Below are positions 2,621 to 26,540 of a stretch of 64,000 bases of DNA, piece by piece. This stretch comes from Diadema antillarum (Eukaryota). Position 1 is the stretch's first letter; the number at the start of each line of letters is the position of its first letter. A program made the translations under genes and the position numbers. The notes under the pieces were generated by a model. The model ran no database searches and had not been told where the DNA came from. It saw nothing but the letters and a program-made list of their open reading frames with translations. Location of the stretch: NCBI RefSeq assembly GCF_040938485.1, contig NW_027270913.1, positions 3,038,001 through 3,102,000 on the forward strand. Reading direction: 5' to 3'.

Positions 2621-4902
2621 CTCCGAACTCTCTCGACAACGGGGTCATTTAGAGTGACCTTTTTATCCGGGCCTTTCATGTGTGCAGCTGCATCCTCGGC
2701 ATTGGCAAAGACCTGTTAAGAAGACGAGGGGTATTGTATCATACTCATATATCCATACGGATCTGTGCGTCGGTGTGTTCCTCCAAAGATCAGTCATGTA
2801 CACAATCGCTCTCATGTCGTTTCAATGCCTTTAGACTGTACAGGACTCCGTTTTACAACGTAGACCTTACTATACAAGGAACTTCATTTTTTTTTTTGGC
2901 ATCTCCCTATGTAGTATCATTCACTGAGTTAGTGAGTATTGGCAGGTATATTATAGTTAGCGACCCCCATACTCACCACATTTTTTTTTTATGGACTCAC
3001 TTTTTTATGATTCTTTATTTGAACTTCGTTCAATTTGATATCACAGAAACAGAAATAATCACAGAAACAAAAACAAAACATTATACAAAGACAAATTGCA
3101 TTATACCCACACATTGTACAAAATAACGTCAATCTTACACTATATTAAGACGAAATGCAGCAACACAAACATTGTGCAAACTAATGTCAAACTTACATTG
3201 TAACTCTTTTAACCCAGAAACGAAATCCGCTTTTTGTTTTTTTAAACACATATTCTAGCTAAAAGCCCGCAAACGGGGACATAATAGATAATTTGCTGAA
3301 AACAAACGGGGCATATTCCATTACTTCTCTAAAGAAAAAAAAAAGAAAGAAATTGAGGCCATTTGTGAGAAAACACACACACATATGCACACACACACAC
3401 CAACACAAACGCCAACATGTGGAAATGATGTGGAAATGGTAGAAGCAATAGAGAGGAAAAAATGACAACAATGTGACAATAACTCGCAGATACGGCAAAA
3501 TCAAGACATAAAAAGAAAATCACATATCATCCTCGGTATACATCATAATATTCCCACTTTAACAAATTCATTCCAACTGTTCCTCTTTTAATCGCTATCT
3601 TATTTTTTCTCCTTTACACATCTTGAAATACTTCATAACATCATTAAACTTTGGTTATACCTCTCCTTCTGATCTCGCTAAATATAAAATACATTTAATC
3701 ATCAATATAAGTGTATTCCACCCTTTGACTTTAAACAAGTTTCCAGATATACCTGTATACACAACTTCCCAATTCATATTTCCCAGTTCTTCTAAATTCA
3801 ATTTCTGAATGATAATTTGCCACAATTCCTTTACTTTAATACGCTCCCAAAATAAATGTGAATATGTTTCAGTGCTCTTTTTGCAGAAAGAACAGAGATC
3901 ATCCGAAACAAACCCAAATCTCAACATATTAACTCTTGTATAAAATACACCATGAAGAAGCTTAAACTGAAATTCCCTAAGCTTGGGATAAGAGTTGTGA
4001 ATCTGGGTCGGAGAAAAATATCTTGCGTTACTTTTGGTGAGAAGGCGAAATTACTCTGTCGATCTCGTACTTCCAATGTATATAACTGCTGTATATCAGT
4101 TAAAAAATACTTGTAAATCTTTCTCGAAGGTATGTCACCAATCCTAATTTCTTTTCCATATAATTTTAATCAAATATCATAAACCTGAAAAGGTTTAGTA
4201 CTGACCCACGACAAACTAAACCGTCTACTTTTCAAAATTACATCACAAATCCTCAAAACATATTCAATTTCCTCACTACATAACCCTGCTTTTTGAAAAT
4301 AAGTAATCGGCCGTATACCTTTTCCATCGAAATAATGACATAATCTATAAATATTTTTTCTCAAAAGATTTTCATTATGTATAATTTCACCTTTAAATAA
4401 AAAAAATATATATTATCAAATACTATTTGATTCATAAGCCCCTCTTCTGAATTTCTCAAATTTCCCAAACCTTGCTACGCTTGTAAAATGTCTTTATAAA
4501 ATTTCGGAACTTTCAAAAAAAAGTTTATTTGTTTCAAAATTACACTGAAAAATTAAAACACCACCAACTGACCTAAAACATATTGAAAATACTTTTTCCA
4601 GGTCATACTCTTTTCTCCACAAAAAAAAGTCTTTTCACCCACATTACTCTTTGAACTTTAACAAACAACTCTTTCACACACACGGCACATGCACACACAC
4701 ACTCACGCACGCACACACACATACTTATGTATGTATGTAGGCACCAGAGTCCTTAATATAGATAATAAAAACGAAAGAACAATACGTTTCGAGTCATTCG
4801 GTTGTATCCAGTGATGGGCGACATCACAACCATCTTCAGCAGAACAATGGCAGCATACGTGACGAAGTATGCCAGCTCTTTAGTCTCCATGAACTCACAC
4901 AT
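2621..4902 (-). CDS. MGST1: MGST1-like copy D, partial: coding exon 1 (4786-4902) and exon 2 (2621-2712); exon 3 not in window
   Basis: Exon 1 MCEFMETKELAYFVTYAAIVLLKMVVMSPITGYNRMTRN|GT. Exon 2 AG|VFANAEDAAAHMKGPDKKVTLNDPVVERVR(R)|GT. Same exon sizes and phases as copies A-C. Confidence 0.85.
3560..4620 (-). mobile_element. L1/Tx1-like LINE 3' fragment (ORF2 C-terminal Cys/His region), in intron 1 of MGST copy D
   Basis: Minus-strand translation KLREFQFKLLH...MLRFGFVSDDLCSFCKKSTETYSHLFW is the typical L1/Tx1 C-terminal zinc-knuckle region. Interrupted by stops; boundaries approximate. Confidence 0.8.
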
Positions 4903-8175: not shown

Positions 8176-9262
8176 TTAGAGATTAAAGTTGTTCATCAAA
8201 ATCTGAACGCCCATGGAAACATTAACACCGAATCCCGCCAAGAAACAAAGAAACCTCGCTGGCTGGGGAACTGCATAGAGATAGACGACGGTGTGTAGCA
8301 GACGAGACACGGTGAAGATTCTGTAGTGCCACAACAGGGTGCTGGTGGAGGCGCCTGAAAAGAGCGCGTAGAGGAGTCCCAGCCCGAAGAAGGGCACGAT
8401 GTTCTCAAGGTCGTTCAGATGACACCTGTTAAGAAGGGCGGAGGAAGTTCAAATGAGACCTTTGAATGTTATCGGAGCGTGCGTTGAAAAAGAAATAAAT
8501 AAATAAAACAAAGAAGAAGAAACATAAAAACAGAAACCTATTCCAGCAGTCTTAGAGTATGTTATTTCCAAAAGGTCCATTCGGTACCATGAATATATTT
8601 ATATAGGACTGATACAACTCTGCGTCTCTTGATAGTAATAATGAAAAAAAAAAACCCTGATAGTGACAAATGAGGAGGTTTATCGAATTTTTCCATTGAG
8701 TGATCACGTACGTGGCTGTCATAATCCGTAATGAAGAATCAATTTTATTCTCAAGAAATGGCAACGAACGGTCCATTAATGCAGCTCAAACTCGTCAAGA
8801 TGGTTTGCTTGGGACAAAAGGTTATAATCGCTTTATCTCTTGTTATCATTATTTTTTATCATAATTACCACGACTATATACCGCATCTGCTACAGCAGCT
8901 GTTCCTGCTACTACTACTGCTGCTGCTGATGCTCCTGCGTAAGCTGCTGTTGCTATGCTGCCTATACTTCTTCCTCTTCATCATCATCTTCTTCATCTTC
9001 TTCTTCTTCTCCTCCTCCTCCTTTTCCTCCTCTTTTTCTTTCTTCTTCTTTTTCTTATATACCTGCCAGTACTTTTTCTTCCTGTTAAGTGAACTAAACG
9101 CCTTCGTGAACTTGGAGAAATAACCTGTGTTTTTTTTCTCCATCTCGTCACCCCCCCCAAAAAAAAAAAAATATATATATATATAATTATGAAGAGCTTG
9201 CTTCCAAAAGGCGCTATATCCATCCTTTTTAAATGGATTTAGCGCCTTCTGGTAGCTAGCTC

Positions 9263-9312
<50 letters not shown>

Positions 9313-10564
9313 TATATATATATATGTATGTATAAATAATCACGTAGGCAGGTTCAAAATTAAAAGCTTCCTTCTCCAACATCATTGCGTCGACACCTCT
9401 CCATCTTGAACAAGGCACCCAAACGAATTTCACCAAATCGCTAATAAGCCTTTTACGGTCATACACTTATTAATGTAAGACAGCAAACTATTGAAGCAAG
9501 TGTGTGTTATTATATCAGAGATGAATATATCGCATCTCACCTTCTTACACGTTCGACCACGGAGTCGTTGGTGACGACTTTGTTGTCTTTCACGGTCGCC
9601 AGTGGCAAGTCTTCAGGATTGCTGAACACCTGCAGGATCGAGAGACATCATACACAATCTGAAATACATCCCGAGGAGACGTATAATCACGCCTAGGCTT
9701 ATCATAGAGGCAAAGGCGCACACAAAAGATAAGAATTATTTTTAGTTTTATGCATCATTTTTTTATTGATACCACGAACATACACATTCTATTTCATGAA
9801 GTTGGTATCTAGTTGTCGGGTTGATATAACACATGTGACACCCTATTCTCAATAAACGTAACTCTGATAGAAACTCATCACCAGACTATTATAGGTGTGG
9901 GCAAATTTTGTTTACCTTTCCCCATACAAATGTACTTACTAAATGCGTTTTCTCACTGGTTGAACTTTTACAAGACTGCAAGTTTCCGATGTATTCACAA
10001 TCGGTCTCAAGACACATGACACATGTAACGGCATTCGTGAAATTTTAAACTCGCATCGAATCATGTCTAGGTATAATTTCATAGTGAATGATTTAATGCA
10101 CAGTACTACAACGAAAATGAATTGCCCAGGTGTGTTGTCACTTTTTTTTCTTTGTTTCACAGAGACCGAATGCTACTAAGGCGTATAACAGTGCAGTCTA
10201 GAATCTTGCGTGAGAAAACATAATCATTTACTGTCTGCAGTAAAATGTACCGTATTTGTAGGACGGACTCCAAGTGTACGAATTTTGTAATAGTCATTTT
10301 ATAGTCATATTACACGGATCAGTATGCACTTTACCAAAAACGTCATTGTCGTGAGGTGTCAATTCAAGTAAGGACAAGTCATATTGTTGATATATATATA
10401 TTATGTATTACCATGCAGCTAGAAACTTATTCTTCATTTCACCTTACCCCTCTCCTGAGTCGAAAGAATGACGTAATTGGTGACATATCAACCATCTTCA
10501 GCAGGACGATACTTGAATACGTCACGAAATACGACATCTCTTTACTTGCAAGGACGTCCGACAT
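8176..10564 (-). CDS. MGST1: MGST1-like copy C, complete, 151 aa: exons 10448-10564, 9541-9629, 8176-8425
   Basis: Spliced ORF MSDVLASKEMSYFVTYSSIVLLKMVDMSPITSFFRLRRG / VFSNPEDLPLATVKDNKVVTNDSVVERVRR / CHLNDLENIVPFFGLGLLY...RLLHTVVYL..PQPAR...NL*. All introns GT-AG. MAPEG MGST1 signature ERVRRxHLNDLENI. Confidence 0.95.
8900..9060. repeat. Compound triplet repeat (CTG/CTA/CAT/CTT/CCT) in intron 2 of MGST copy C
   Basis: Directly visible. It produces the spurious poly-L/F and poly-K/E/S ORFs at 8731-9223. Confidence 0.85.
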
Positions 10565-11600
10565 TATGCTGGATTTAATCCGTTTTCCTCACTGTTCAAC
10601 GTTCCTTGTCCAAGGTGTGAGAATGGGTATCATGCAGATCTCTATAACGTGTAACAGTGTCAGTTGTGTACGAGATGGTTGTACTCGCGTGCAGGAAGAG
10701 TTTTAAAAAGCTCCCTATATGTGCACGCATGCGATCCCCTCGGTGCAAATAGTCCTTCACAAACTGAATAATGAATTCAAATATTGCTGTGCACACCCAA
10801 CCACCCTACAATAGGTCCATCGGAATTTTCGTTTCGTGCTCGACATTTCATAGTGGGAGCAAAGTTCAAACAAATATGAGATTTCGCCTGGAGTTTGAAT
10901 ATATGCAAGTACCTAGATATAGTTAGGGACCATAGGCCTTTATAGTACTGACCTTAAACTGCTGTGACATTGTGATTATCTGACAAATCAGTGTTTCAAC
11001 AACGGAAGGATAAAATTGTGCTCTATGCTGCTAAAATGAACACAGATTATTGACACATGGGTGTCCAGCGTAAAAGCGAGACAATGTGAGCACATGCACT
11101 GCAGGCCTACGTCTGTAGCTGTGAGTTTATTTGCACTTTATTGAGAAAGGATTTTCAATAATGCTGTGTCATCGTCAGTTCTATTAGAAAGAATCACAGT
11201 GAACACACCTCACATCACACCATCATGCACATTGCACGCACAGATTAATTGGAAAGCCTAATTGTAGTATAATAAGAGCAATGTATTGAACTACTATAAG
11301 TACCTCGTGTGCAACCTTGAATGAGGTCGTTGTCACGGTTATAACAATATCGCTGTATAAAGGTCATTCTCTGTGCTGTAACACAAATGCCTGTGTCAGG
11401 TTGTGTTGTGACATTTTATATGAAATTTACTATCATACGATCAATCTCCTTTACAAATGAAGTGAATGGGAGGGTAACGTTATCAATGGTTTCTGTTGAT
11501 TGTGTTATACCAAAAACACGTGCGGTATGATAATATAAAACTAAGGATGTGGAACATCCCCCCCCCCCCCCAAAAAAAAAAAAAAAAAAAAATGCTGGTT

Positions 11601-11995
11601 TTAAAGGGATGGTATAGTTTTGGTTGAGATGGGTCTTCAGGTTTTCAACACTATTTAACGGTATTTTTCTCTTTTTTGAGATATCGAGAAATTTTCATGA
11701 AAAATGAGAGAGGATATATTTTCAGGGGGAATTCAAAGTTTATTTTATGAAAATCGGTTTGAAATGGCTGAGATATCAAAAACAAAGCGATCCTTATAAG
11801 TGGTTGGACCCACCTTGGGATCGCTTTGATTTTAGTCGTGATTCTTTTTTTTTTTTTTTTTTTTTGGTCAAATAAACTTTGAATTCCTCTTAGAATTGTA
11901 TGCTCTTTCACATTTCATAAAGTGAAGTATCTCGTTAAAAAAAAAAGGTTAAAACCTGAATCCTCACCTCAACCAATACTATACCATCCCTTTAA
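11601..11995. mobile_element. T2/Kolobok-like MITE with TTAA target duplication
   Basis: TTAA|AGGGATGGTATAGTTTTGGTTGAG ... CTCAACCAATACTATACCATCCCT|TTAA. Related copies at 31748-32140, ~38720-38770 (fragment) and 55625-55830 (partial). Confidence 0.8.
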
Positions 11996-12009
11996 TTTTG
12001 AGAAAGAAA

Positions 12010-12125
12010 TGTTTCAATAATAATGATAATAATAATAATAACAATAATGATATGAATTTATATTGCGCGAAATCTACTCTATAGAGTGCTCAAAGCGCAT
12101 ACATACTATTATTAACCCGGTGTCT
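12010..12125 (-). mobile_element. 3' tail of an L2-type LINE/SINE
   Basis: Minus strand GCGCTTTGAGC...GCGCAATATAAAT followed by (ATT)n tail. Confidence 0.55.
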
Positions 12126-12939
12126 GGATACCTTTATTTCTTGCCAGCTCTGACACTACAATACAAGCACCCTGTTGGAGAAAGAGTAACATGACAGAAA
12201 GAGTTCGAGATACATAGACCGAGACAGACAGACAGACAGACAGATAGACAGACAGACAGACAAGCAGGCAGACAGACAGACAGACATAGCGATGAGACAG
12301 AGGGAGAGAGAGAATGAAAGAAAGGAAATGACAGATTCACTGGCACCAAATAATAAATTAAAAGATGACCGATCCTATTACAGCCCAAATTTATCAAAAG
12401 AAGTTGACATACCAGTTCACCTCACGTATCGCATAACCTAATGGCCAACGTAAGATGCATTGTTTTAAGCATAATAAGAGTTTGAATTCATGATGAGGCC
12501 TCTCATTTTGCCGTCAGATAGAAAAAAAAATGATTAGTTTTCTTCTGTTTGAACGCCAGATCCAATATACGCATTGAAAACTCATATAATTCAGGGAACC
12601 AGGATTGACAAAAATGAGATTTTCACAGTTCGTTGAAAAGACTGCCGCGGTATTTCGAGAAGCTTATTCTTGGACCAAAATTCACACTCTTGTACTAACA
12701 GACACTTTGACAGCTAACCAAGCATATTATCATACTGATTGGAAGAATATATACAGATGTTTATACTTATGTTTACGATGTGTATACGTATATACATATA
12801 TATATACGAAGAAGAAAAAGAAAAAAAGAAGGGAAAAAAAAAGAAGAAGAAGAAGAAAAAAAAACTCGCCTGGACCGGGAAGGAGGGAGAACGGGGGTGG
12901 GGGGGGGGGGGGGGGGGAGAAAACCAAATCAAACAAGAT

Positions 12940-13800
12940 GAAAACAAAAAATGACAATGTTTATTGTGTTCACACAGGAATTCCATGTTTTGTAAGCTGA
13001 AATTTTGGCTCGCTCGTTGCGCTCGCTCGTCAAAATTCATATAAAGAGAAAAAAGAAGATAAGAACAAAACGTGATGATGACGCGGACAAAATGACAATG
13101 TATATTGTGTTCACACATGCCATCGTTAGAAGGCAAAATGTTACACGGAGCAGCGGCTGCAATTTTATTTCTTTCGTTCTTAAGCGATCGCCTATTGGAT
13201 CAAACGAGGGCGCCAAAGGTGTCGAACATAAGGGGGGGGGGGCGCAAAAAACCAAATCAAACAAGATAAGAACAAAACGCGGAAATATACAAATTTCGGC
13301 TCACTCGCGCGTACTAATTTAGAGTATTTTTTTTTCAAGTCCTCAGTTTGTTGGTATAAATCGTTATCTATAAGGCCGTCACCATTAATTTTCTTGATTA
13401 GAATTGTAAGATTTAACAAGCAAAAAAATGACAAGAATTCCATGTTTTGTAAGCTGAAATACAAAAATTTTCGGCTCGCTCGCTGCGCTCGCTCGTCAAA
13501 ATTTATCACAAAAAAAAACTAAGAACAAAACGTGATGATGACGCGGAAATATACAAAAATTTTCGGCTCGCTCGCTGCGCTCGCTTCGCCAAAATCTATC
13601 TACATTTATTACATTCAAATCACCCTCATCTATAAGGCCGTCACTATATCTTTATTAGAATTGTAAGATTTAATAAGCAAAAAATGACAACAATTCCATG
13701 TTTTGTAAGCTGATATACAGAAATTTTCGGCTCGCTCGCTAAAATTTCTCCAATAAAAAAAAGAGATAAGAACAAAACGTGATGATGGCGCGGAAATATA
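12940..13800. repeat. Imperfect direct repeats carrying a TTTTCGGCTCGCTCGCTGCGCTCGC motif (probable DNA-transposon internal repeats)
   Basis: Block AATTCCATGTTTTGTAAGCTGA..CGGCTCGCTCG at ~12980, ~13437 and ~13692; block ATAAGAACAAAACGTGATGATG(A/G)CGCGGA repeated four to five times. Confidence 0.7.
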
Positions 13801-13813
13801 CAAATAGATACGC

Positions 13814-13864
<51 letters not shown>

Positions 13865-14291
13865 TATACAGTTAAACTCGCATAAGTCAATCTTCTAGGG
13901 ACTGAGCAAAACATCGACTTAGGCGAGTTTCGACTTGTGCGTAAGTCGAAAAAAAAAGTTACAGTTACACCACGCGTACATATGTATAATGTACATGTAT
14001 GTTGTGTACTCTGGAGCCGAGAGCTGGAGCGGTGTGCCCGATATTTGCCCTTCAGCAAGACACTTTATCCACATTGATGCAGGCCAGGGCTCCACACCAA
14101 ATTTTATTTTGGCGGCCCGATCGGGCCACCAAAATGATTGATTTTTATTTTTTGGTGGCCCGAAAAAAAAAAACAAGCAAAACTAAATAGGTCCTACTAA
14201 ACATAGAAAAATGAATATGAAGTATTACTGAAGTGATACAGGACGGTATCCATGTCTAAAATAAATAAATAGAAAATTTAATCATCTTATA

Positions 14292-16374
14292 CAGTGAAAC
14301 CCCGTTATAACGAGGTCCGTGGGACCGGCGATATTACCTCGTTATAACTGGTACCTCGTTATATCCGTACGCATCAAAAACAAAGAAAAACATAAGCACG
14401 ACATCATATACCCATTAATGAAACTTAAGAACATTCTTTGCGTTATTATTACACAATTATGGATCATTATGATTCAGAGAATGAAGGGAAATTATTTGTG
14501 AAATAGACGTAAAAGTAAGGGCTGAAATGAGTTAAATCTTTATTGTAATAATTCTTGTTTGTGAAGTTTTTCTAAACACCAGCGCAAATAGAGTAACATA
14601 CAGGCCTTGTTTACCATAGCTTGCGAGGTATTTTTACGCTGTTGGTGCCCAGCGTGAATGCGATGATTTCATGAATCATTTCGGCTGTAACAAAGTTGTA
14701 CAATGTATGATCGTTGCGCCCGAAGGGATTAAAAATGCGTTCTTTATTTTCTTACGAAACTCTCTTCGCGTTTCGTACATCCGTTCTAGAAGAATATGCG
14801 ACAGGATTGAATGTGGAAGGCCGAGATCCTTTTTACGCAAAAATGTACCTGGTAGACCATTCTGAAAGAAAGAAAAATCTTCATTGTGAAATGCAGTGTT
14901 AAAATTGTTATAATGAACATACCCAGATCTATTCAAACTAAGAAGATGCATTGGTTTCTTTTTCTGATTTAGGTTAACATGCGTCATTCAACTTTTTTAC
15001 GCTACTGTCACATGGCGACATCGCGATGATTTCAGAGTAACATGCATGCGTTGTTTACTGTTAACTTCGAGGTATTTTTACGCTGTTGGTGCCCAGCGGG
15101 AATTAGATAATTTCATGAATCATTTCGGCTGTAATTTTATACAATGTATGATCGTTGCGCCCGAAGGGATTAAAATGCGTTCTTTATTTTCTTCCGAAAA
15201 TCTCTTCGCGTTTTGTACATCGATTCCGCTCTTGAACTGTTAAATGCGTTTGTTTCTATTTCCGAACACCGATTAAGTAGGTTAATATGCGTTATTCAAC
15301 TATCTTTTACGCTACGGTCACCCGGCGAGATCGCAATGATTTCACTAATTATTATTTCGGCTTCAATCATACACACTCATTTAAATTATCATTTTGTTAA
15401 ACGATAATGAACAAATCCGGATCTATTCAAACTAATAAATGCGTTTGTTTCTTTTTCTAAACACCGATTTAGGCTAACATGCGTTATTAAACTATTTTTA
15501 CGCTACCGTCACCCGGCGGGATCGCGATGATTTCACTGATTATTTCGGCTTAAATCATACACACTCTATATGAGTCAAATTATCATTTGTTAAATGATAA
15601 TGAACAAATCCAGATCTATTCAAAGTAAATAAATACGAATGTTTCTTTTTCTGAACACCGATTAAGTAGGTAACATGCGTTATTCAACAATTTTTACACT
15701 ACTGTCAACCGGCGGGATCGCGATGATTTCATTAATTCTTCGGCTTTAATCATCCACACTCATATTTGCTATTATAACCAGCAAAAGAACTGAAAGTCGG
15801 AACTAAAAATGGAAATGATATAATGATGAGTTGCACACGCATTCCAATTGTCTATTTTTGGCCACAAGTGTCGCTACATGAAAAGTTTTTTAATGCGTTA
15901 TCCTTTTTTTTTTCCTCGTTGCGCTGTGGTCTGACCTAATATCACGCACACCTATCTTGTGAAAAAGAAAATTAAATGATTATGTCTAATAATTCAGAAG
16001 GAACATCGGAAGGCATTCCTGTGTCTTATCGCGTGGTTTAGAAGAAAATATGGACGGAACGGTTCTCTGCAAAACGGGAAAAAGACGCGGATAGCGTGAA
16101 TTCGGTTTTCAATGTTTCGTTTGTCGCCTGTTTGAGAGTGACAATTTAGCAAGAAATGGAACCTCGTTATATCCGATCAAATTGCTTATGTTTTTCTTTA
16201 TCATGATGCACCGAAATTGTCCTCGTTATAACCGGAATCTCGTTATAACCGAACTCGTTATAACCGATTCGTTCTGCCATAGGTTTACACGCAACGGAAA
16301 ACGGGACCGACGCGATCACCTCGTTATAAGCGGTTCCTCGTTATAACCGAACTCGTTATAACGGGGTTTCACTG
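14292..16374. mobile_element. Inner pogo/Tigger-like non-autonomous element with ~195-bp internal tandem repeats
   Basis: TA|CAGTGAAACCCCGTTATAACGAG ... CTCGTTATAACGGGGTTTCACTG|TA (perfect 23-bp TIR); many subterminal CTCGTTATA motifs; internal units at ~15262, ~15460 and ~15651. Confidence 0.88.
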
Positions 16375-16519
16375 TACCGTTATTCTGAGTTCTAAGATTT
16401 AGCAAACAGGCTTATGGATTATGATAAAAGTTGATGCCTATTTAGGTGGTCAAAATTTACGTTTGAAATGAGAAAGTGGGAGCATTTGCAGACATTTTGT
16501 AAACATCCGACATTTGTTT

Positions 16520-17790
16520 TAGCATCGTAAAGAGCCGAATGTTGCCGTTAATTATTTTCAAATGTAAAAACAAGCAACCGACATTCATTCTAGGATCTTA
16601 CGGAGCTGAATATCATTCTTATTCATTTCCGAACGTGAAAGCAAACATCCGCTTTTTATTTTATCATCTGAGCCGATTGATACCGTTAATCATTTCCAAA
16701 TGTAAAAGAAACAATCTGTTAGCATCGTACGGAGCAGAATATTATCGTTATTCGATCTCCAAATTCAAAAGCAAACACCCGACATTTATTTTATGATCGT
16801 AAGGAGCTGAATGTTACTGCTGTCCACTTCCGAAAGTGAAATGAATCATCTGACAATTATTTCAGTATCGTAAGGAGCCGAATGTTATACTGTTTTTCAT
16901 ATTCGAACGTCAAGGCAGACTTCCGACATTTACTTTACCATCAAACGCAGCTGAATGTTATTGTTATTCATTTCGAAATGTTAAATAGCAAATGTCTGAT
17001 ATTTATTTTAGCATCTTAATTATGGAGCAGAATGTTACTGCTATTCACTTCCGAACGTAAAAGCAATCATCTGACATTTATTTTGGCATCTTTCGCAGCC
17101 GATTACATAATATGTCTAACATGCTATATTTACTTTCGAATGTAAAAAAAAGCCAACATTCGGCATTTATTTCATCATCGTACGGAGTTGAATGTTATTG
17201 TTATTCATTTCAGAACGTCAAAGGGATAATTCGACATATATTTTAGCATCTTCCGGAGCTGAATGTTATTGTTATTTACTTACGAACGTAAAAGTAAACA
17301 TCCGGCATTTATTTTATCATCGTACGAAGTTGATCATTATTGTTATTCATTTCCGAACGTCAAAGGGATAATTCGACATTTACTTTAGCATCTTCCGGAG
17401 ATTAATGTTATTGTTATTTACTTTCGAACGTAAAAGTAAACATGCGGCATTTATTTTATCATCGTATGGAGTTGAATATCATTATTATTCATATCCGAAC
17501 GTCAAAGCAAACATTCGACATTTATTTCAGCATCTTCCGGAGCCGTATTTTATCCTTATTCATTTCCGAACGCAAAATCAAATATCTGACATTAATTTCA
17601 GCACCGTACGGAACTGAATCTTACCATTATTCATTTCCAAAAGTGTAAGCAAACATCCGACATTTATTTTAGTATTATACGGAGTCGAATATTACCGCTA
17701 TTCATTTCCAAGAGCAAACATCTGACATTTATTCTAGCATCTTATGGAGCCGATTGTTACCGCTGTTCATTTCCAAAACTGAAGGCAAAC
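16520..17790. repeat. Diverged ~71-bp minisatellite, about 18 copies
   Basis: Approximate consensus CATCGTACGGAGCTGAATGTTATTGTTATTCATTTCCGAACGTAAAAGCAAACATCCGACATTTATTTTAG, head-to-tail with no unique spacers. Confidence 0.88.
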
Positions 17791-18436
17791 ATCCGGCTTT
17801 TTTGGTGGCCCGGCGTGCGTTTTTGGTGACCCCGGTCGCAAATTAACCATTCGCGAAATCGTGATTGATTCGCGAAAAGACTCCGCTAAATATAAGGCAT
17901 AGATCGCTACACTCGGCAGGGGCTACGTCGTCCTTTCACCAGGTCTCGGTAACGGAAACCAAAATCTCGCGTGAGTTCTTATTGCGTTACCTATATATCG
18001 TTAATGTCAACTAAACATGGTTAATTTGCGCTTGGGATCGTTACTCATCGTTACTACAAACATTCATTTTCCCGATCGTTAGTTTGCGTTACTAACGATT
18101 CAGGTGAAACCGCTTGCGTTAATGAAACGTTAATGTTTATCAACGCAAAGTTTCTTTCGGTATATATACTGTATGTAAACAAAAACTGGCGTCTCGTGAT
18201 TTTGACAGTGATTTATTACACAATAAAATCTTATTCGACTTAGTCACAGTGAATTCAATGTTTTTTCCGTGAAAGTGCTCATGGAATTTCATCGACTTAG
18301 GCGAGTATTCGACTTAAAAAATTCGACTTGTGAGTGAATTAATACACGTAAGTCATTGGGGAAAAATCGGGACTTTTTAAAATCATCGACTTGTGCGATT
18401 ACTCGACATATGCGACGTCGACTTAGGCGAGTTTAA

Positions 18437-18467
<31 letters not shown>

Positions 18468-20076
18468 ATGATAAATGTATATATATACAATGTTGTTTAT
18501 AAATGTGTGTGTATGTAGTGAAAGTGAATATTCACTACTTTAGTAGTCCTCGGAGTCTACGATTTCTATATCATCTACTTATAATAGATAATGATGTCGA
18601 TATTGCTCAATACTCAGTACTACACGGTACTGAGCGTTCACCAGGTAACTATTACACTTTTTGAGAATACTGATCACTGTACATAAAAGGGACGGAAAAT
18701 GTAATTATTTATCACTAACAACTTTTATTCTGTTTCGAGGTGCATATTTCTTGAACTTTCCTCAACGGTGTAAAAATGAGGCTTCCTTCCTTGTTTATAA
18801 AGTCCTTTCAAAAAGAAATTTGCTACGGATATCATAATCACGTCATCACCACATTAGATGAAACTGATTAAATTCATTAAATCTGCACAAAATCAGAAAG
18901 GAATGTAAAAAAACATTGCCAAGTTGAGAGAGAAACAGGAACTTGGAGGTCATTCTATTGTGTTGCCAATTGACGAATCGGTTATCATTTTAGCAATCAT
19001 TACAAGTTTTTAGCTTCTGCAACAGAAAATAAAGTTCATAGAATGTAACTATAATATTGTTCGAAATTTTAATGGATATGATATTTTTTCTTTATCTAAT
19101 GAAGTATACTAGCAACGAATAGCAAAACACAATAATGAAAAGATACAACACCAAACCAAAGAAATTTCGTTTTTGAGCGCTAGTCTGCAATGACCTCTGG
19201 AATCACAGGCTGTACAAAACATGGCACAATCTTTTTAGAGGAACAAATGAAAACATCTCAACAGAGGATAGTAATCTGCATGTAAGTGCTGTATGAAAGT
19301 TTTTCATTATATTATCAATTTGATTGAAAAGAATGCAAAATATTGACCTGTATATTTCAATGAAGATATGCACCTTGGTCATACATGGATATTTTATAAT
19401 ATCATAGTTTTCATGAAGACCTATCCAGTTACGAAATCAGCTTAAACTTCAGTCTGAAGAGAAGGTTTACAATAACATTTACCTGTACATGCTCAGATGG
19501 TAACTGTAAAAATGGTTTGTTAATGGTGGAGAAGGGCAACATTTCAAGTTCGGTTCCTAACTTTGCGCCTTTGGCAGAGAATCTTATCATAATGATGATA
19601 AACAGGGCAAACAGAAAAAAAAAAGAGGAAACAGTAAATCTATGATCAATACCTGTATTTCAGAAGAACTCCGCATTCGCGTATAAACATCTCAAATGAA
19701 ATAAACGAAATAAACAAGATAAACAAGTAACCAAACTCATTGGTTTCTATTTGAAACCAATGTAAAACGATAAAAAGAAACTACCACAGCAATTTTATTG
19801 TGGTAGTTTTGTTTTGTTTTGCTTTGTTTTGTTTTGTTTTATTTTGTTTTGTTTTGTTTTGTTAGCGAAAGCATTTGATATGCGATATGAAAACAAACAT
19901 CACGCTATCATACACACCCTAATAGTTACGTGTAAAGACACTAAAATCAACGACTAGAAATAATACCAAGGAATGACAGTTTATAATAACATCGATAATC
20001 ACATGTAACCGTCACTGCAGTCGTCAAATGATGCAAACATGATTTATCTGCTGTTTCACTCTAAAGTGGTAACACA

Positions 20077-20558
20077 TTATAGATTAAAATTGTTCATCAA
20101 TATCTGAACACCCATTGAAATATTGACTGCTAATCCTGCAGCGAAGCACAGCGCCCTCGACGGTTGGGGAATGGCGTTGAGGTAGACGACGGTGTGTAGC
20201 AGACGAGAAACGGTGAAGATCCTGTAGTGCCACAACAGGGTGCTGATGGAGGCGCCTGAAAAGAGTGCGTAGAGGAGTCCCAGCCCGAAGAAAGGCACGA
20301 TGTTCTCAAGGTCGTTCAGATGACACCTGTATGATAAAGGCATTCCACAAAAGAAAGTGTACAGTCATCCTGATAAAACATGTGACAGTCTTGTATGTTG
20401 CGAAGATTTCTTGATAGCAACAGATTGCCTCCAAAAGCTGTTGTATCCCAGAAGGCCCTACCTGATGCAGTTTGCGATTCAAGAAGCACTGAGTTCACGA
20501 GTGAGAAAGTTTAGTTTGTTTGTGTGTGTGTGTGCGTTTGTGTGTGTGTGTGTGTGTT

Positions 20559-20611
<53 letters not shown>

Positions 20612-22269
20612 AGATGAGGTTTACAGTATGGATACCTTTACTACTGTATCATAATATCGCTTGATTTCTTTTGGACACCATTTCAAAATAGCGATTTTGT
20701 ACTGGACCAGATGGACCACAATAAATCGGCTGCTTATACTGAATATAGAAATGCTGTAATTATATACATGTACTACTTGTTGTAAATTCATGCACTTTTT
20801 TATTGTTTCATTCGTCACGATACTCATAGTCGAATTCAAATGAATTTATTAGGAATTTTCTGCATCGAATAGGCTCCTACATATTACAAAAATGAAATAC
20901 AGTCATTTCTTTTTGTTTACAAGACAAAGGAACCACAATGTGTGCATCCTAATATAAAACTGAAATATACGTGTACAGATTAAAGAAAAGAGTAAGAGAA
21001 CACGTCGATTGGGAACCACTCGGGATAAAGAAAATCAAATGATCTGACTGAATAATGGCACATTTAGTGTATTGGGAGTGTAAATGCAGAAAACTGTCGT
21101 CAAATAAGCGTAATTATAGCTTGAAGACACGACAGCCTTGAAAGACAAGGAAGAGAAAAAAATGGAAAAAACATGCATCTTGTGTATACTTATCGAAAAG
21201 AAAAGAAAAAGCGTCATCAATCCCTTCTGTTTGACTTTCTATCACAGAAGTCATAAAAGAATTATTCTTTAAATTATTGTTTTGTATATCTTTTGTTTTT
21301 CTCTCAGAAAGCAGTAAGAAATACAATGCACACATTGAAAAACAAAGACTATCAACAGCCAACAGCACTGTCAAAGGAACTTTTTTTTTTGTTTTAATAT
21401 GGAAGGCGCCATCCATGCAGGGTCACTATACTGATTATTGTCTACCTCCGAACTCTCTCCACTACAGGATCGTTCATAATGGTCTTGTTGTCTTTGACAC
21501 CTTGTCCCACCGTATCTTCTTGGTTGGCATAGACCTGCATGAGACAGACGAAGAAAATTATTGCTCAGATGAAAAGCGTTTCACGCGTGCAGGTGCAGGT
21601 GCAGTAGAGTGTTTTACACAGTGATTTCAGTAGTGCTTCCGTTTGCATGGTTTGGTAAGATTTACGGTAAGGTTTTAAGTAAGGCTTTATAGGCTTACGG
21701 AAAGGTTTTAGGTAAACACTTGAAGTAAACCAGTTTCCAAAGGTATTGCAGAGATTAGGCCCACTAGAAAGTCAAAATGAAGATGATAACATAATTATTG
21801 TTTATGTGGCCAATAAATCATCAATAAATGAGACAGGGGGAGAAGGGTTTTAGCATAAATGATTATGACCTCATCAAAATACTCAAGAATTATAGTTTAA
21901 GTGAGGATGGAATACAATAGACAAAGAAGTATGAAATGTCCAATCACGTTCAAAGCATAATGTAAGACAATGAGCATGGAATAATTTTGAAATCATAGTA
22001 AAAACATTTTATATTATCTTTCTTCTTCCATTTGGGGCATTTTTTTAAAACTGTATATTGCAGCGGAGGTATAAGTACATAATTCATGCGAGTGTGGGTG
22101 TGTACGCTGACTAGACTATAGATATCCTATACGAAATAAGCCCACGTCGTACCTTTCGTGTAACTCTGAAGAATCCAGTGACAGGCGACATGAAGACCAT
22201 CTTCAGCAGCACGATCGTGACGTAAGTCACAAAATAGGAAAATCCTTCACTCCCAAGACCGTCGGACAT
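20077..22269 (-). CDS. MGST1: MGST1-like copy B, complete, 151 aa: exons 22153-22269, 21446-21534, 20077-20326
   Basis: MSDGLGSEGFSYFVTYVTIVLLKMVFMSPVTGFFRVTRK / VYANQEDTVGQGVKDNKTIMNDPVVERVRR / CHLNDLENIVPFFGLGLLY...PQPSRAL...NL*. GT-AG introns, open frame. Confidence 0.95.
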
Positions 22270-22861
22270 TTTTCCTCTCCTATTAGGTCGTCAGTGGAAG
22301 TAAAATGAAACTTTAGCAATTGTCAATCGACAATCTGTGTATGATTACAACCACACTCCTGTATGGATAAGCTAAGACGGCAACGGTGGAAATGTAAGGT
22401 GGGTGGCCAAATCCAAACTACTCATCTTTTTATTTATACATAAATGGTGCTTCTTCGATAGAGCACGCGACTGCTACCTATCATTGAAGACAAAGTCCAC
22501 ACAGATAGGACCCTATTCTTGTAGCTTGAATTATATTGACATTTATTATTGTGGTGGATAATTTACAACTATACACTATCCTGTCTGTGAACCCTCCTCA
22601 AGAGGAAAGGCTCGAATTGAGAATATTATTTGCTCAGCCCAGGGTCTATCCTGTGTACATAGGTGAAGTGCAGGGTTATAGCACTGCAACTGAGGAGGTG
22701 AAAAACATCATAAAGCATGAATCTAGCAGCGATTGTCAGTTAAAATGAATGTTTCGAGATCTCATAATTCGTCTCAATGTTCATAGTATGAGTGGTTTTT
22801 AAACACATCACAAGACTAGGCACGTGAGCAAAAAAAAATATCAGAATGGGACAATTTAAGA

Positions 22862-22895
22862 TGTGTGTGTGTGTGTGTGTGTGTGCGTGTGTGTA

Positions 22896-22935
<40 letters not shown>

Positions 22936-22985
22936 TGTATGCACTGTTTGTGTGCTCGGGTGTGTGTGTGTGCGTGTGTGTGTTT
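22862..22985. repeat. (GT)n microsatellite; others at ~20520-20589 and 24489-24530; (GACA)n ~12220-12285; (GTTTT)n ~19805-19862
   Basis: Directly visible. Confidence 0.95.
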
Positions 22986-24486
22986 CTTGGGGTGGTGTCA
23001 GGTCCGATATTTGTTAAACGTTCACAATCATTTTGTATCTATGTCTGAGATGTACTTTTTTTTCTTTTAAAGCCAAATTGAATATGATGCAGAATCGCCA
23101 TTTTGATATCTTCCAACGCAGAGATAGCCTACAGTGGTATTGTGACAGCGGAGATTCTGCACTTAAGCATACACTCAAAATCATTTTTCATAATTCATAT
23201 CTTTCTTCTATATTGCTGGGTTTTCTATGTGCATACTTTGCATTCCCTGCATGCAAGTATCTGATTCGCGTCTCAACCTGGTGATCACGCGACTCTCAGC
23301 AAACTCTGATTTCAGTAATCCCTGTTTCGTCTAGCGGACATTATTTTGTTCTCTCTCTCTCTCTCTCTCCCTCTCTTTTTCTCATACCCTTTACTGTTTG
23401 TATTTTCCATTTTCATGATTTGTCATTCTTTTCAGCTGTAACTTTCAAGTGAGAATTCACCTAATAAATCAGTTCTGAGAAAATAATCTACGTCCTGCAA
23501 GCAATGCTTCCACCGTAGATTCATCATAGTTCACATGTCTTTATTATAAATTTTTTTTATTCAACAATTTTTGATTACTCATTCAGGATTTTTTTTTATA
23601 TTTATGGTTTATTTGTTAAAACATGGAATATGGAGCAAAAAGAAATAAAACGAACAAACAAACAAACAACAAACATTGAAACAACCATTCTTTACAAAAA
23701 AAAAATGCATAAAACATTGGGTTCAAGAAAAGATCACGAGGTTATCATCAATAAGGGAGTTCATGGTTAGGGCATGTCTCATTTGACCCCTACACCACAG
23801 ACTTTGAAATAACATGGACATGGCATGTGTTGTGATCAAGAATTCCTTTTTGAAGCATGTCATCTTGTATTAAATCAATGTTGAGAAAGTGCATGGAGAG
23901 ATTTTGCTGAACAGTGTTGATGAATGACTTACACCTGTACGTTCTAATTTAGTCTGAAACACATTCATTGTACTGACATAATTCAGATTCTCATAGTTGC
24001 TCGAGACTTCTTTACGTTTTAAAGTCAGTGGCAAATACACAGACATTCTCATTTGACCTTTGTTCTGCACATGCGCAAATCACAACCGTGAACTCCCTTA
24101 TATTAATTTTGATGGTTTCTTCATCAACGAATCTTGCCACCAAGACTGCTACTGACAAGTGATTAATCATGAAGAAACACAGTATTTAATTTCACTTTCT
24201 GATTCTACTATGGTGCTCGTGTCATAATATCTTTATGAATGGATAAATGTCATCGACCTTTGACAGGTTAAAACAGTTGTACAATGACATTGAATACATT
24301 TCGAAGAAATGATTGAGATCGCTTTCATGTCAATTTTTCTTTCTTTCGATCGAGCTGCACTCAATGCAATGATGATTTAACATAGTCACAATTACTAAAT
24401 TAAGTGAGTTAAAATTCTCATTCTCAAAGATCTCTGTCAATTTCCTTAAACATGACATGATTGCTTGCATTGCATTCTGCATTTTC

Positions 24487-24531
<45 letters not shown>

Positions 24532-24536
24532 AAATC

Positions 24537-26540
24537 TTAAAGGTTAATGTTGTTCATCAGTAACTGCACGCCCATGGATACATTAACACCGAATCCTGCT
24601 AAGAAACAGAGCGCCCTCGATGGTTGGGGAATGGCGTAGAGGTAGACGATGGTGTGTAGCAGACGAGATACGGTGAAGATTCTGTAGTGCCACAACAGGG
24701 TGCTGATGGAGGCGCCTGAAAAGAGCGCGTAGAGGAGTCCCAGCCCGAAGAAGGGCACGATGTTCTCAAGGTCGTTCAGATGACACCTGTTTGATACATC
24801 ATGACATAAAATTGTTTTTATGTTGATTCATCTATGATTTTATATCAGGCTTCCTATTCACTGAGAAAGAGAAAAATATCAAAATTGTATTATTACGAAA
24901 GGTAAGAAAATATGGTGGCGCAACAACATGTCACACATTTCCGACAACAAACGCCATCGTGTCCCAGTCTTGATCCAACAGGGACGAACAGGCCTCACCG
25001 ATAAATTTATAATGCATGACATAATCGTTACACAAGATTTAAACTTACAGTGACCATTTTACTTTCTGTAAAATAATAAGGAATTAGTGGAACGTCCCTT
25101 ATTCTAAATCTGTCACTAGTTGCTGAATTTTTGGCATTTTCTTTCCTCTCTAGATGATAGAGATTGACTGCAGTAGAGCAAAACAGGCATTTACGTCTTT
25201 TTCGCTTATATACTCATTCAAAAAGTAGTAAAAAAAAGAAAACAGGTCATTCTCAGATGGAGTCATAAGATCAGTCGCGTTTTTATAATCTTCGTGTTCC
25301 TCAGAATGCAAGAAGTTTATGGGCAAGTAGTTAAAGGAAAAGACCATGGACACTGTAAAATCTGTAAGGAAGAACATATCCTTGACAGAACTGAGGAGTT
25401 TTTTATTTTAGCTTACCTCCTCATTCTCTCAATAACCGGATCGTTGAATGTGAGTTTCTTCTCTTTGTAGTCTTTCCGAACTGCCATATCCTCTTCATTA
25501 GCAAAAGCCTGGAATGTAATACATGCAGAGACCAGAAAATTATGTGAATATGACGTGACTGAATTACTCTTTTTTACAACAAGTTGCTGTCGCAACTGAG
25601 GCTGGATGAAAGGTTCATAAGCTGGGCTTCCTGATTTTACTCTTTTCACTTCTCCTCATTTAATATGATTTCTTTTCATTTCTTACCATTAAATTATTTC
25701 AGGTCGTTTGATCAAGTTTGATTTTCTCACATCATATCATACTTCGTTTTTCGCTTCATATTGTATCATTCTGTTAAAATACTCATTAACAGCATCATAA
25801 ACAGCGTTGATTCTGTCCACTTTTCGTACATGATCAGTTATACATGGGGCTGGTATCTTTAAAATGAGGCTTGTGTGCCGTTAGGTCCATCAAGCATTTG
25901 GGATTATAGCAAGGAGGTACTAGGCGAGCTCTTACCTCCTTGGTTATAGATTGTGAATTGCCTTATAATTTCAGTCATTTTTTCCCTCAAAATACCTTTA
26001 CATACATCCATCACATCACACCATCATGACCATGAGCTTCTGTATAACAGATACAGGCTGTACACACACCGTGCACACAACAATTGCAAACAGCTGAAAC
26101 AAAACGTGTGCCATATCTAAGATACACTTTGTAAGTCCTTCTATAAACATCGGTCCCTAGTGGTTCGAGACTCGATCAGTGATACCAGTTGAACCAAAGG
26201 CAATACATGTATTCCCTAATAATATCACTCCTTCTTAATGTCAGTCCCTATAGTTTAGCAATATACTAACACAAAGTGCAGGCTCAGACTGTTGAAGAAG
26301 GAAAGAAAAGGACAGCTGAAGGATGAAGGAAACGGAAAGGAGGAGGAGAGGAGAAAGAAAGAGAAGCAGCAGCAGAAGAAGATTAATGCTGATAGTGACG
26401 ATCTAGACAGCATGCTACGTTACCTTCCTCTTCACTCTCGTCAGCCCTGTCACGGGGGACAATAAAGCCATCTTCAGTAGTATGACGGTTCCATAGGTCG
26501 CGAAGTACGAAAGTTCCTTTTTCATAAGATAGTCAGACAT
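24537..26540 (-). CDS. MGST1: MGST1-like copy A, complete, 152 aa: exons 26424-26540, 25417-25508, 24537-24786
   Basis: MSDYLMKKELSYFATYGTVILLKMALLSPVTGLTRVKRK / AFANEEDMAVRKDYKEKKLTFNDPVIERMRR / CHLNDLENIVPFFGLGLLY...PQPSRAL...NL*. GT-AG introns, open frame. Confidence 0.95.

What the first reader, a model, noticed from the sequence alone, without database searches (positions are those of the whole stretch)
8176..24789. Exon-restricted homogenisation of MGST exon 3 across anciently diverged paralogs
Seen: the ~145-nt 5' part of exon 3 (8282-8428, 20183-20329, 24643-24789) differs at only about 3 sites between copies A and C (one synonymous) and about 5 between A and B. Identity stops abruptly at the splice acceptor (CTG|TTAAG vs CTG|TATGA vs CTG|TTTGA on the plus strand). 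Exon 1 of A and C is only 20/39 aa identical, and many conserved residues use different codons. The distal part of exon 3 is a mosaic: A is B-like at IPQPSRAL, C-like at FLAGFGVNVS, and B equals C at VQILMNNFNL. Known: this segment encodes the HLNDLEN/TM2-TM3 glutathione-binding core of the MAPEG trimer. Inference: recurrent ectopic gene conversion keeps the GSH core constant while TM1, the cytosolic loop and TM4 (second-substrate side) diversify, giving a constant-core, variable-pocket detoxification array.
Basis: partly seen in the sequence, partly recalled or inferred. Interest (0 to 1): 0.75.

Follow-up and report, generated by a model that had tools for sequence, protein, structure and literature searches.

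The report
Gene conversion in sea-urchin MGST genes
In a tandem array of five old microsomal glutathione transferase genes of the sea urchin Diadema, the first ~140-220 bases of the last exon are kept nearly identical by repeated copying between the genes (gene conversion); this is a clean example of a well-known process.

Summary
The window is Diadema antillarum. It carries four of five tandem MGST1-like (MAPEG) genes on the minus strand, here called C, B, A, D and E in transcription order; E lies off the window.

- **Paralog divergence.** In the first 143 nt of the last coding exon the paralogs differ at 3-7 sites (mean synonymous p-distance 0.11). Exons 1-2 are saturated (0.64-1.0) and distal exon 3 is 0.3-0.8. 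Introns and 3' flanks do not align.
- **Species comparison.** The D. setosum array settles the cause. Orthologs differ at synonymous sites as much in the homogenised tract (0.077) as elsewhere (0.10-0.11), so the tract is not frozen by selection on the nucleotides.
- **Site pattern.** Only 1 of 14 variable sites in the tract is fixed between paralogs, against 79 of 121 elsewhere (p = 3e-5).
- **Tract ends.** Variants are shared across paralogs in incompatible patterns. The 3' ends of the tracts differ by pair (nt 135-218).
- **Pseudogene.** The D. setosum copy of gene D has a broken exon 1 yet keeps the tract.
- **Not an artefact.** Two assemblies of two species and contigs from two other studies agree.

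The cause is recurrent interlocus gene conversion bounded by intron non-homology. The adaptive "constant core, variable pocket" reading is untested, and the catalytic Arg130 equivalent lies outside the tract. This is a new member of a known kind.

The parts
24537..24786 (-). Gene C (first in transcription order), exon 3 including the stop codon. Homogenised tract about 24643-24786.
   Evidence: (MAPEG 3e-17). RNA-like contig joint 24786/25417. Protein identical to P0001.
25417..25508 (-). Gene C exon 2
   Evidence: Splice joint seen in run X3.
26424..26540 (-). Gene C exon 1 (coding part, ATG to GT donor)
20077..20326 (-). Gene B exon 3 including the stop codon. Homogenised tract about 20184-20326.
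   Evidence: Contigs of two studies bridge unique flanks into both ends. Protein identical to P0003.
21446..21534 (-). Gene B exon 2
   Evidence: Exon 1-2 splice joint 21534/22153 in X3.
22153..22269 (-). Gene B exon 1
8176..8425 (-). Gene A exon 3 including the stop codon. Homogenised tract about 8283-8425.
   Evidence: (MAPEG 2.7e-18). Protein identical to P0002. A loose end shows the exon 2-3 splice.
9541..9629 (-). Gene A exon 2
10448..10564 (-). Gene A exon 1
4786..4902 (-). Gene D exon 1. Its exon 3 lies beyond the window start (L001:17779-18027).
2621..2712 (-). Gene D exon 2

Best explanation
Five tandem, same-strand MGST1-like genes (C-B-A-D-E, 4-12 kb apart) are old duplicates. Non-reciprocal copying between them (interlocus gene conversion during repair or recombination) has repeatedly overwritten the 5' part of the last exon.

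The tract starts at the splice acceptor because the introns share no homology, so a heteroduplex cannot extend into them. It ends 135-218 nt downstream, at different points for different gene pairs.

The likely seed is the part of the protein that never changes in echinoderms (RCHLNDLENIVPFFGLGLLYA, the GSH-binding and TM2 segment). It keeps enough DNA identity for pairing, and each conversion restores identity, so the process sustains itself. The less constrained TM4 part and exons 1-2 have escaped.

Shown here: mosaic ages within one exon, a normal synonymous rate between species inside the tract, variants shared across paralogs, pair-specific ends, and persistence in a pseudogene. Inferred: the homology-seeding mechanism. 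Conversion has continued since the two Diadema species split and is still segregating (gene D alleles).
For: - **Gradient within the gene.** Paralog pS is 0.03-0.17 in nt 1-144, against 0.29-0.80 in nt 145-246 and 0.64-1.0 in exons 1-2.
- **Not frozen between species.** Orthologs in D. antillarum and D. setosum differ at synonymous sites by 14/181 in the tract, against 11.5/117.5 (distal) and 12/110 (exon 1); p = 0.39.
- **Site classes.** Sites fixed between paralogs versus sites variable within a paralog: 1:13 in the tract, 79:42 elsewhere, p = 3e-5.
- **Incompatible sites.** 17 of 36 informative site pairs in the tract fail the four-gamete test, against 60/465 distally. Variants at nt 33, 42, 60, 80, 105, 117 and 136 are shared between different paralogs while orthologs or alleles differ.
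- **Pair-specific ends.** Change-points lie at 135-143 (A vs others), 157 (B-D, D-E; C-D in D. setosum), 176-179 (B-C, C-E) and 218 (B-E). The older distal mosaic is the same in both species.
- **Trees.** Exon 1 and distal exon 3 cluster by paralog with inter-paralog branches of 0.1-0.4. The tract gives a star of depth <= 0.04.
- **Pseudogene.** D. setosum gene D has a broken exon 1 (about 790-nt insertion, 14-nt deletion, lost donor). Its tract nevertheless equals the A-type sequence except at one site.
- **No RNA signal.** No Rfam hit and no unusual RNA fold (z = +0.68).
- **GC3.** 0.75-0.79 in the tract against 0.50-0.64 elsewhere, in the direction expected from GC-biased conversion.
- **Independent data.** Contigs from two further studies bridge unique flanks into both ends of the repeat.
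Against: - The proximal tree is unresolved. AU tests cannot reject paralog clades there (p 0.2-0.6), so strict clustering by species is not shown.
- Two of the seven shared variable sites are CpG sites, where parallel mutation is plausible.
- The 'shared variant' count alone does not separate the tract from other regions (p = 0.53).
- High GC3 could also reflect codon preference.
- No population sample and no long reads of single molecules were examined.
- The homology-seeding step is inferred, not tested.
Confidence: 0.88

Rival explanations
1. Conversion happens, but natural selection shapes the pattern. Conversion of the TM2-TM3/GSH-site core is favoured or tolerated. Conversion that reaches TM1, the cytosolic loop or TM4 is removed, because those parts carry paralog-specific substrate preferences. 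It extends the best explanation rather than replacing it.
For: The tract encodes the MGST1 GSH-contact motif, TM2 and TM3. Inter-subunit contacts run between H76 and E81 of adjacent TM2 helices. The second substrate enters between TM1 and TM4 of different subunits (PMC5554250; alignment to rat MGST1). Paralog-specific differences in TM4 and exon 1 are conserved between the two species, so they are maintained. A, B and C are all expressed and spliced.
Against: There is no sign of diversifying selection: ortholog dN/dS is about 0.3 in exon 1 and 0.13 in distal exon 3. The catalytic Arg (rat R130) and gate Tyr138 lie in the non-homogenised part. A neutral model limited by homology predicts the same picture. 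Tract ends differ by pair rather than sitting at one functional border. No substrate data exist for these enzymes.
Confidence: 0.3
2. There is no conversion. The tract is held constant by purifying selection on the nucleotide sequence itself, such as a splicing enhancer, an mRNA structure or an overlapping element, with only a few free or hypermutable sites toggling.
For: Very low paralog divergence at synonymous sites. The tract begins exactly at the acceptor, where exonic splicing signals are expected. Only 14 sites vary among 14 copies.
Against: Orthologs diverge at synonymous sites in the tract at about the same rate as elsewhere (0.077 vs 0.10-0.11). The ratio of paralog-fixed to within-paralog differences collapses only in the tract (p = 3e-5), which constraint cannot produce. 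The 3' limit is pair-specific. A pseudogene keeps the tract. There is no Rfam family and no stable fold. Only 2 of 7 shared sites are CpG.
Confidence: 0.04
3. Assembly or polishing artefact. Reads of one copy were used to correct the others, or haplotypes and individuals were mixed in an assembly known to be 2.5-fold duplicated.
For: GCA_040938485.1 is 1.75 Gb for a genome of about 0.7-1.0 Gb. It has 84% duplicated BUSCOs and gap-patching with reads of other individuals. The array occurs twice on the same contig, 1.7 Mb apart and inverted, at 99.3-99.7% identity.
Against: The same tract with the same limits is present in all five genes of the independent D. setosum chromosome assembly. Copy-specific variants inside the tract are reproduced across assemblies (nt 9 in all D copies). 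Contigs from two other studies join each unique flank to the repeat with no mismatches, and break only inside the shared ~120 nt, as expected for a true repeat.
Confidence: 0.03

Closest known systems
Partial interlocus gene conversion in tandem paralogs, e.g. mammalian TLR1/TLR6 (PMC2077338)
   Same: Tandem paralogs in which one part of the coding sequence is kept alike by conversion while another part stays divergent. The evidence is of the same kind: region-specific loss of paralog divergence and tree conflict between regions.
   Different: Here there are five genes rather than two. The tract is a sub-exon piece of 135-218 nt bounded by a splice acceptor. It occurs in an echinoderm MAPEG family, for which I found no report.
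Theory of concerted evolution with islands of divergence (review PMC3924837; GOT1 paralogs of Tigriopus, PMC3728101)
   Same: Low divergence between duplicates maintained for a long time, raised allelic variation carrying paralog variants, and persistence of divergent regions next to converted ones.
   Different: No population data here. The raised allelic variation rests on one gene: D alleles show 3 differences in the tract and 0 in distal exon 3.
Vertebrate MGST1 (rat structures 2H8A, 5I9K; PMC5554250)
   Same: MAPEG fold signature and the R-R-x-H-L-N-D-L-E-N motif. About 55-60% identity over exon 3. The same three-coding-exon layout as I recall for human MGST1 (from memory).
   Different: Vertebrates mostly have one or two MGST1 genes. 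Diadema has a five-gene tandem array with concerted evolution of the TM2-TM3 segment.
Variable-first-exon clusters (UGT1A, protocadherin; PMC1885805)
   Same: The functional outcome is variable N-terminal parts combined with a constant C-proximal part. In one D. antillarum haplotype the RefSeq model joins exons 1-2 of gene C to exon 3 of gene B.
   Different: Each MGST gene keeps its own last exon. Constancy is achieved at the DNA level by conversion, not by splicing to a shared exon.

Membership tests
MAPEG / MGST1 subfamily | Pfam MAPEG domain (PF01124) above the curated cut-off | tested here: met
   Exon 3 peptides alone score 62-67 bits against a cut-off of 23.4. Full proteins P0001-P0006 carry PF01124.
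MAPEG / MGST1 subfamily | MGST1-diagnostic GSH-contact pattern R73 R74 - H76 - N78 - (I/L)80 E81 (PMC5554250) | tested here: met
   All copies read ...RVRR|CHLNDLEN across the exon 2/3 junction. Aligned to rat MGST1 residues 73-151 at E = 2e-23.
MAPEG / MGST1 subfamily | Catalytic arginine at the start of TM4 (rat R130) | tested here: met
   PQP(S/A/T)R is aligned with rat PQPNR and present in all copies. It lies in the non-homogenised distal part.
MAPEG / MGST1 subfamily | Glutathione transferase or peroxidase activity of a membrane trimer | not testable with these tools
   No biochemical data. Expression and correct splicing of A, B and C are indicated by RNA-like contigs.
Interlocus (ectopic) gene conversion / concerted evolution | Paralog divergence much lower in a delimited tract than in flanking homologous sequence, at synonymous sites | tested here: met
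   Mean pS 0.11 against 0.60 (distal) and 0.73 (exon 1). Change-point permutation p <= 0.001.
Interlocus (ectopic) gene conversion / concerted evolution | The tract is not simply slow-evolving: orthologs diverge at the normal rate while paralog-specific fixed differences are missing | tested here: met
   Ortholog pS 0.077 against 0.10-0.11 (p = 0.39). Fixed versus within-paralog sites 1:13 against 79:42, p = 3e-5.
Interlocus (ectopic) gene conversion / concerted evolution | Paralogs of one species cluster together, to the exclusion of orthologs, in the tract | tested here: inconclusive
   The DNA tree of the tract is an unresolved star and AU tests are not significant. At protein level all Diadema copies form one clade (98/98) in the tract only. 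Species-restricted shared variants exist, e.g. nt 42 in D. setosum B and C.
Interlocus (ectopic) gene conversion / concerted evolution | Mosaic or incompatible site patterns indicating exchange | tested here: met
   Four-gamete failures 17/36 in the tract. Distal mosaic runs test p = 0.01-0.03 in both species.
Interlocus (ectopic) gene conversion / concerted evolution | Direct observation of conversion events (pedigree, sperm typing, population haplotypes) | not testable with these tools
   Only two haplotype-like copies and one sister species were available.

The most novel reading that the evidence does not exclude
The homogenised tract encodes TM2 and TM3, including the H76-E81 contacts between adjacent TM2 helices of the trimer. 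Conversion, with selection, may keep the trimer interface identical in all five paralogs so that they can co-assemble into mixed trimers. Active sites and substrate entries lie between TM1 and TM4 of different subunits, so mixed trimers would give combinatorial substrate pockets from only five genes. A protein-level hint that exon 3 also evolves in concert in Strongylocentrotus would make this a long-lived feature of echinoid MGST arrays.
Probability: 0.1. Interest if true: 0.7.

Novelty: new member of a known kind. Interest (0 to 1): 0.4.

Why it matters
This is a compact, well-controlled example of sub-exon concerted evolution. It has five paralogs, two species, two haplotypes and one pseudogene, with one sharp limit at a splice site and a graded limit on the other side.

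It is useful as a teaching or benchmark case for conversion detection. It is also a warning for phylogenies and dN/dS scans of detoxification gene families in echinoderms, because trees built from exon 3 would mis-date the duplications.

It also gives a testable link between conversion tracts and the architecture of a membrane trimer. It does not reveal a new mechanism.

Tried and rejected
- **S. purpuratus DNA.** A second protein search found no other urchin with a contig, so that lineage was compared at protein level only.
- **Shared-variant count.** A count of variants shared across paralogs did not discriminate regions, because diverged sites match by chance (p = 0.53). I replaced it with the fixed-versus-within-paralog test.
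- **AU tests.** AU tests on the tract have too few sites to be informative.
- **Intron alignments.** Global alignment of B and C intron 2 between species failed because of large indels (66% identity). Only intron 2 of gene A (95.9%) was used as the neutral yardstick.
- **RNA explanations.** Rfam and folding gave nothing.
- **Literature.** A search for MGST plus gene conversion plus tandem returned no paper.
- **cDNA-mediated conversion.** Rejected, because the end of exon 2, across the splice junction, is not homogenised (pS 0.6-1.1).
- **Recent duplication plus fast divergence.** Rejected, because synonymous sites of exons 1-2 are saturated and the introns do not align.
- **Joined coding sequence.** The joined-model step was left out.
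Full report
**What is in the window.** Scanning the window with the exon peptides gave complete three-exon models for three genes:
- 26424-26540 / 25417-25508 / 24537-24786
- 22153-22269 / 21446-21534 / 20077-20326
- 10448-10564 / 9541-9629 / 8176-8425

It also gave exons 1 and 2 of a fourth gene (4786-4902, 2621-2712). All have GT donors and AG acceptors. Exon 2 ends in phase 2, so the codon for the second Arg of RR|CHLNDLEN is split.

A word search identified the proteins as 'microsomal glutathione S-transferase 1-like' of Diadema antillarum, identical to my models (P0001, P0002, P0003). I call the genes C, B, A, D and E in transcription order.

**Checking the observation.** In the first 143 coding nt of exon 3, A and C differ at 3 sites, while A-B and B-C each differ at 5. 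In the remaining 103 nt they differ at 20-27. Nei-Gojobori synonymous p-distances:

| Region | Synonymous p-distance between paralogs |
|---|---|
| Exon 3, nt 1-144 | 0.06-0.17 |
| Exon 3, distal part | 0.29-0.80 |
| Exon 1 | 0.64-0.79 |
| Exon 2 | >= 0.65 |

Identity stops at the acceptor, and the intron and 3' flanks of the paralogs do not align (45-52%). A likelihood change-point with permutation of site order is significant for every pair: p <= 0.001 for all except B-E, which gives 0.009-0.02.

**Bringing in relatives.** Cluster look-up and contig look-ups gave three things: the rest of the array (D exon 3 and gene E; L001), a second copy of the whole array on the same 3.43-Mb contig (L005, L006), and the single orthologous array of D. 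setosum (L002-L004).

The D. antillarum assembly GCA_040938485.1 is 1.75 Gb for a haploid genome estimated at 0.70 Gb from k-mers and 0.89-1.03 Gb in phased or collapsed reassemblies. It has 84% duplicated BUSCOs (10.64898/2026.05.24.727502; PMC13511894). The two arrays are 99.3-99.7% identical in introns. I therefore treat them as two haplotypes, not as a real duplication.

**The decisive comparison.** The 14 exon-3 sequences show that all five paralogs in both species share the tract.

If synonymous sites in the tract were frozen by selection, orthologs should be nearly identical there. They are not. Summed over five ortholog pairs, synonymous differences are 14 per 181 sites in the tract, 11.5 per 117.5 distally and 12 per 110 in exon 1 (p = 0.39). 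Intron 2 of gene A differs by 4.1% between the species.

So the tract changes at the ordinary rate, yet paralogs that are saturated elsewhere are no more different in it than orthologs are. Classifying variable sites makes this a test:
- In the tract, 1 site is fixed between paralogs and 13 vary within a paralog (between species or haplotypes).
- In distal exon 3 the counts are 30 and 19, and in exon 1 they are 49 and 23.
- Fisher p = 5e-4 against distal alone and 3e-5 against both.

Constraint would lower both classes together. Only exchange between paralogs removes the fixed class.

**Signs of exchange.** Seven tract sites (nt 33, 42, 60, 80, 105, 117, 136) carry variants present in different paralogs while orthologs or haplotypes of the same paralog differ. 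Examples are nt 42 A only in D. setosum B and C (neighbours), and nt 60 A in D. antillarum B and in one haplotype of D. The Thr/Ile site at nt 80 differs between orthologs of B and C and between haplotypes of D.

17 of 36 informative site pairs in the tract fail the four-gamete test, against 60 of 465 distally. The 3' limits are pair-specific:

| Gene pairs | Change-point (nt) |
|---|---|
| A vs the rest | 135-143 |
| B-D, D-E (C-D in D. setosum) | 157 |
| B-C, C-E | 176-179 |
| B-E | 218 |

The distal part is itself a mosaic that is the same in both species:
- nt 144-175: B = C = E
- nt 176-215: A ~ C and B ~ E
- nt 216-246: A ~ B

These are older, longer tracts that predate the species split. 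Trees agree. Exon 1 and distal exon 3 group by paralog, with inter-paralog branches of 0.1-0.4. The tract gives a star no deeper than 0.04.

**A pseudogene control.** In D. setosum, gene D has three defects: an insertion of about 790 nt just after the ATG, a 14-nt deletion in exon 1 and a lost donor. No protein model exists for it. Its exon 3 is still open, and its tract equals the A-type sequence except for the D-specific nt 9. It differs from D. antillarum D at 5 tract sites. This fits overwriting from a neighbour and does not fit selection on the D transcript.

**Alternatives.**
- *RNA element:* no Rfam hit in the window, and no stable fold (z = +0.68).
- *cDNA-mediated conversion:* the end of exon 2 is not homogenised.
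- *Artefact:* the pattern is reproduced in an independent chromosome-level assembly of another species. Contigs of two further studies (X1, X2) run with no mismatches from the unique flanks into both ends of the repeat (19920-20179, 20301-20506, 24762-25387 or beyond), and break only inside the shared ~120 nt.

Run X3 behaves as RNA. It shows the B exon 1-2 joint (21534/22153) and the C exon 2-3 joint (24786/25417). It also has a loose end at 24788 that is the end of A exon 2. So A, B and C are expressed and spliced as modelled. These were contigs, not raw reads, so per-copy variants inside the tract could not be checked.

**Mechanism.**
- *Shown:* recurrent non-reciprocal exchange limited to 135-218 nt at the 5' end of exon 3, continuing after the species split.
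- *Inferred:* the acceptor is the limit because intron homology is gone. The seed is the invariant peptide RCHLNDLENIVPFFGLGLLYA, which is identical from the crinoid Antedon to urchins up to residue 13 and nearly so beyond. It preserves two-thirds of the nucleotides, and each event restores full identity.
- *Consistent but not proof:* GC3 is 0.75-0.79 in the tract against 0.50-0.64 elsewhere, the direction expected from GC-biased conversion.

**The functional reading.** By alignment to rat MGST1 the tract covers residues 74 to about 120:
- the GSH-contact motif R73 R74 H76 N78 E81;
- the H76-E81 contacts between adjacent TM2 helices;
- TM2 (65-95) and TM3 (104-120).

The catalytic R130, the gate Y138 and TM4 lie in the distal part, and the second substrate enters between TM1 and TM4 of different subunits (PMC5554250).

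Ortholog dN/dS in the variable parts is 0.13-0.3, with no sign of diversifying selection. The adaptive 'constant core, variable pocket' idea remains a hypothesis. A neutral homology-limited model suffices.

**Age and generality.** The paralogs are at least several-fold older than the split of the two Diadema species: saturated pS against an ortholog pS of about 0.1. Protein trees do not resolve whether they predate the split from camarodont urchins. Only in the tract do all Diadema copies form a supported clade (98/98).

In S. purpuratus, protein P0008 is closer in exon 3 to its paralog P0013 (44/48 and 28/34 identical residues in the proximal 48-residue and distal 34-residue parts) than to P0007 of L. 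pictus (40/48 and 23/34). P0007 is its partner in the N-terminal tree. This hints at the same process there.

**Novelty.** Sub-genic conversion with divergent islands is well described (TLR1/TLR6, PMC2077338; review PMC3924837; GOT1, PMC3728101). I found no report for MGST/MAPEG. If those are real, this is common in Diadema. Verdict: a real, well-supported, ordinary-in-kind case, of moderate interest.

Noticed in passing
L006:11600-11860, equivalent to window 24643-24821: In the other copy of the array (probably the other haplotype), gene C lacks 179 nt. The missing piece is the last 35 nt of intron 2 with the acceptor, plus exon-3 nt 1 to about 141, which is almost exactly the homogenised tract, with a 1-2 bp microhomology at the junction. 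The RefSeq model P0122 joins exons 1-2 of C to exon 3 of B there. It is not verified by reads.
   Followed up: partly
L002:14800-15910 (D. setosum): Gene D of D. setosum is a pseudogene in exon 1 (insertion of about 790 nt after the ATG, a 14-nt deletion and a lost GT donor), but it keeps an open exon 3.
   Followed up: yes
Contig JBFRCO010000025.1, 1.266-1.322 Mb and about 3.02-3.07 Mb (L005/L006 versus window/L001): The whole five-gene array and its upstream neighbour occur twice on one contig, inverted and 1.7 Mb apart, at 99.3-99.7% identity. D. setosum has one array. Given the published 2.5-fold duplication of this assembly, this is most likely an unpurged haplotype joined into the contig, not a real duplication.
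   Followed up: partly
window 24492-24528: A (GT)n microsatellite of about 37 nt starts about 8 nt downstream of the stop codon of gene C. It is also present in the other haplotype. No link to the tract limits was seen.
   Followed up: no
window 20664-21236 and 23529-24101: Two intronic or intergenic stretches attract hundreds to thousands-fold contig depth in all four runs. They are high-copy dispersed repeats.
   Followed up: no
Proteins P0008, P0013, P0007 (S. purpuratus, L. pictus): At protein level, exon 3 of S. purpuratus paralogs is more alike than exon 3 of N-terminal orthologs between species. This hints that the concerted evolution of exon 3 is not limited to Diadema.
   Followed up: partly
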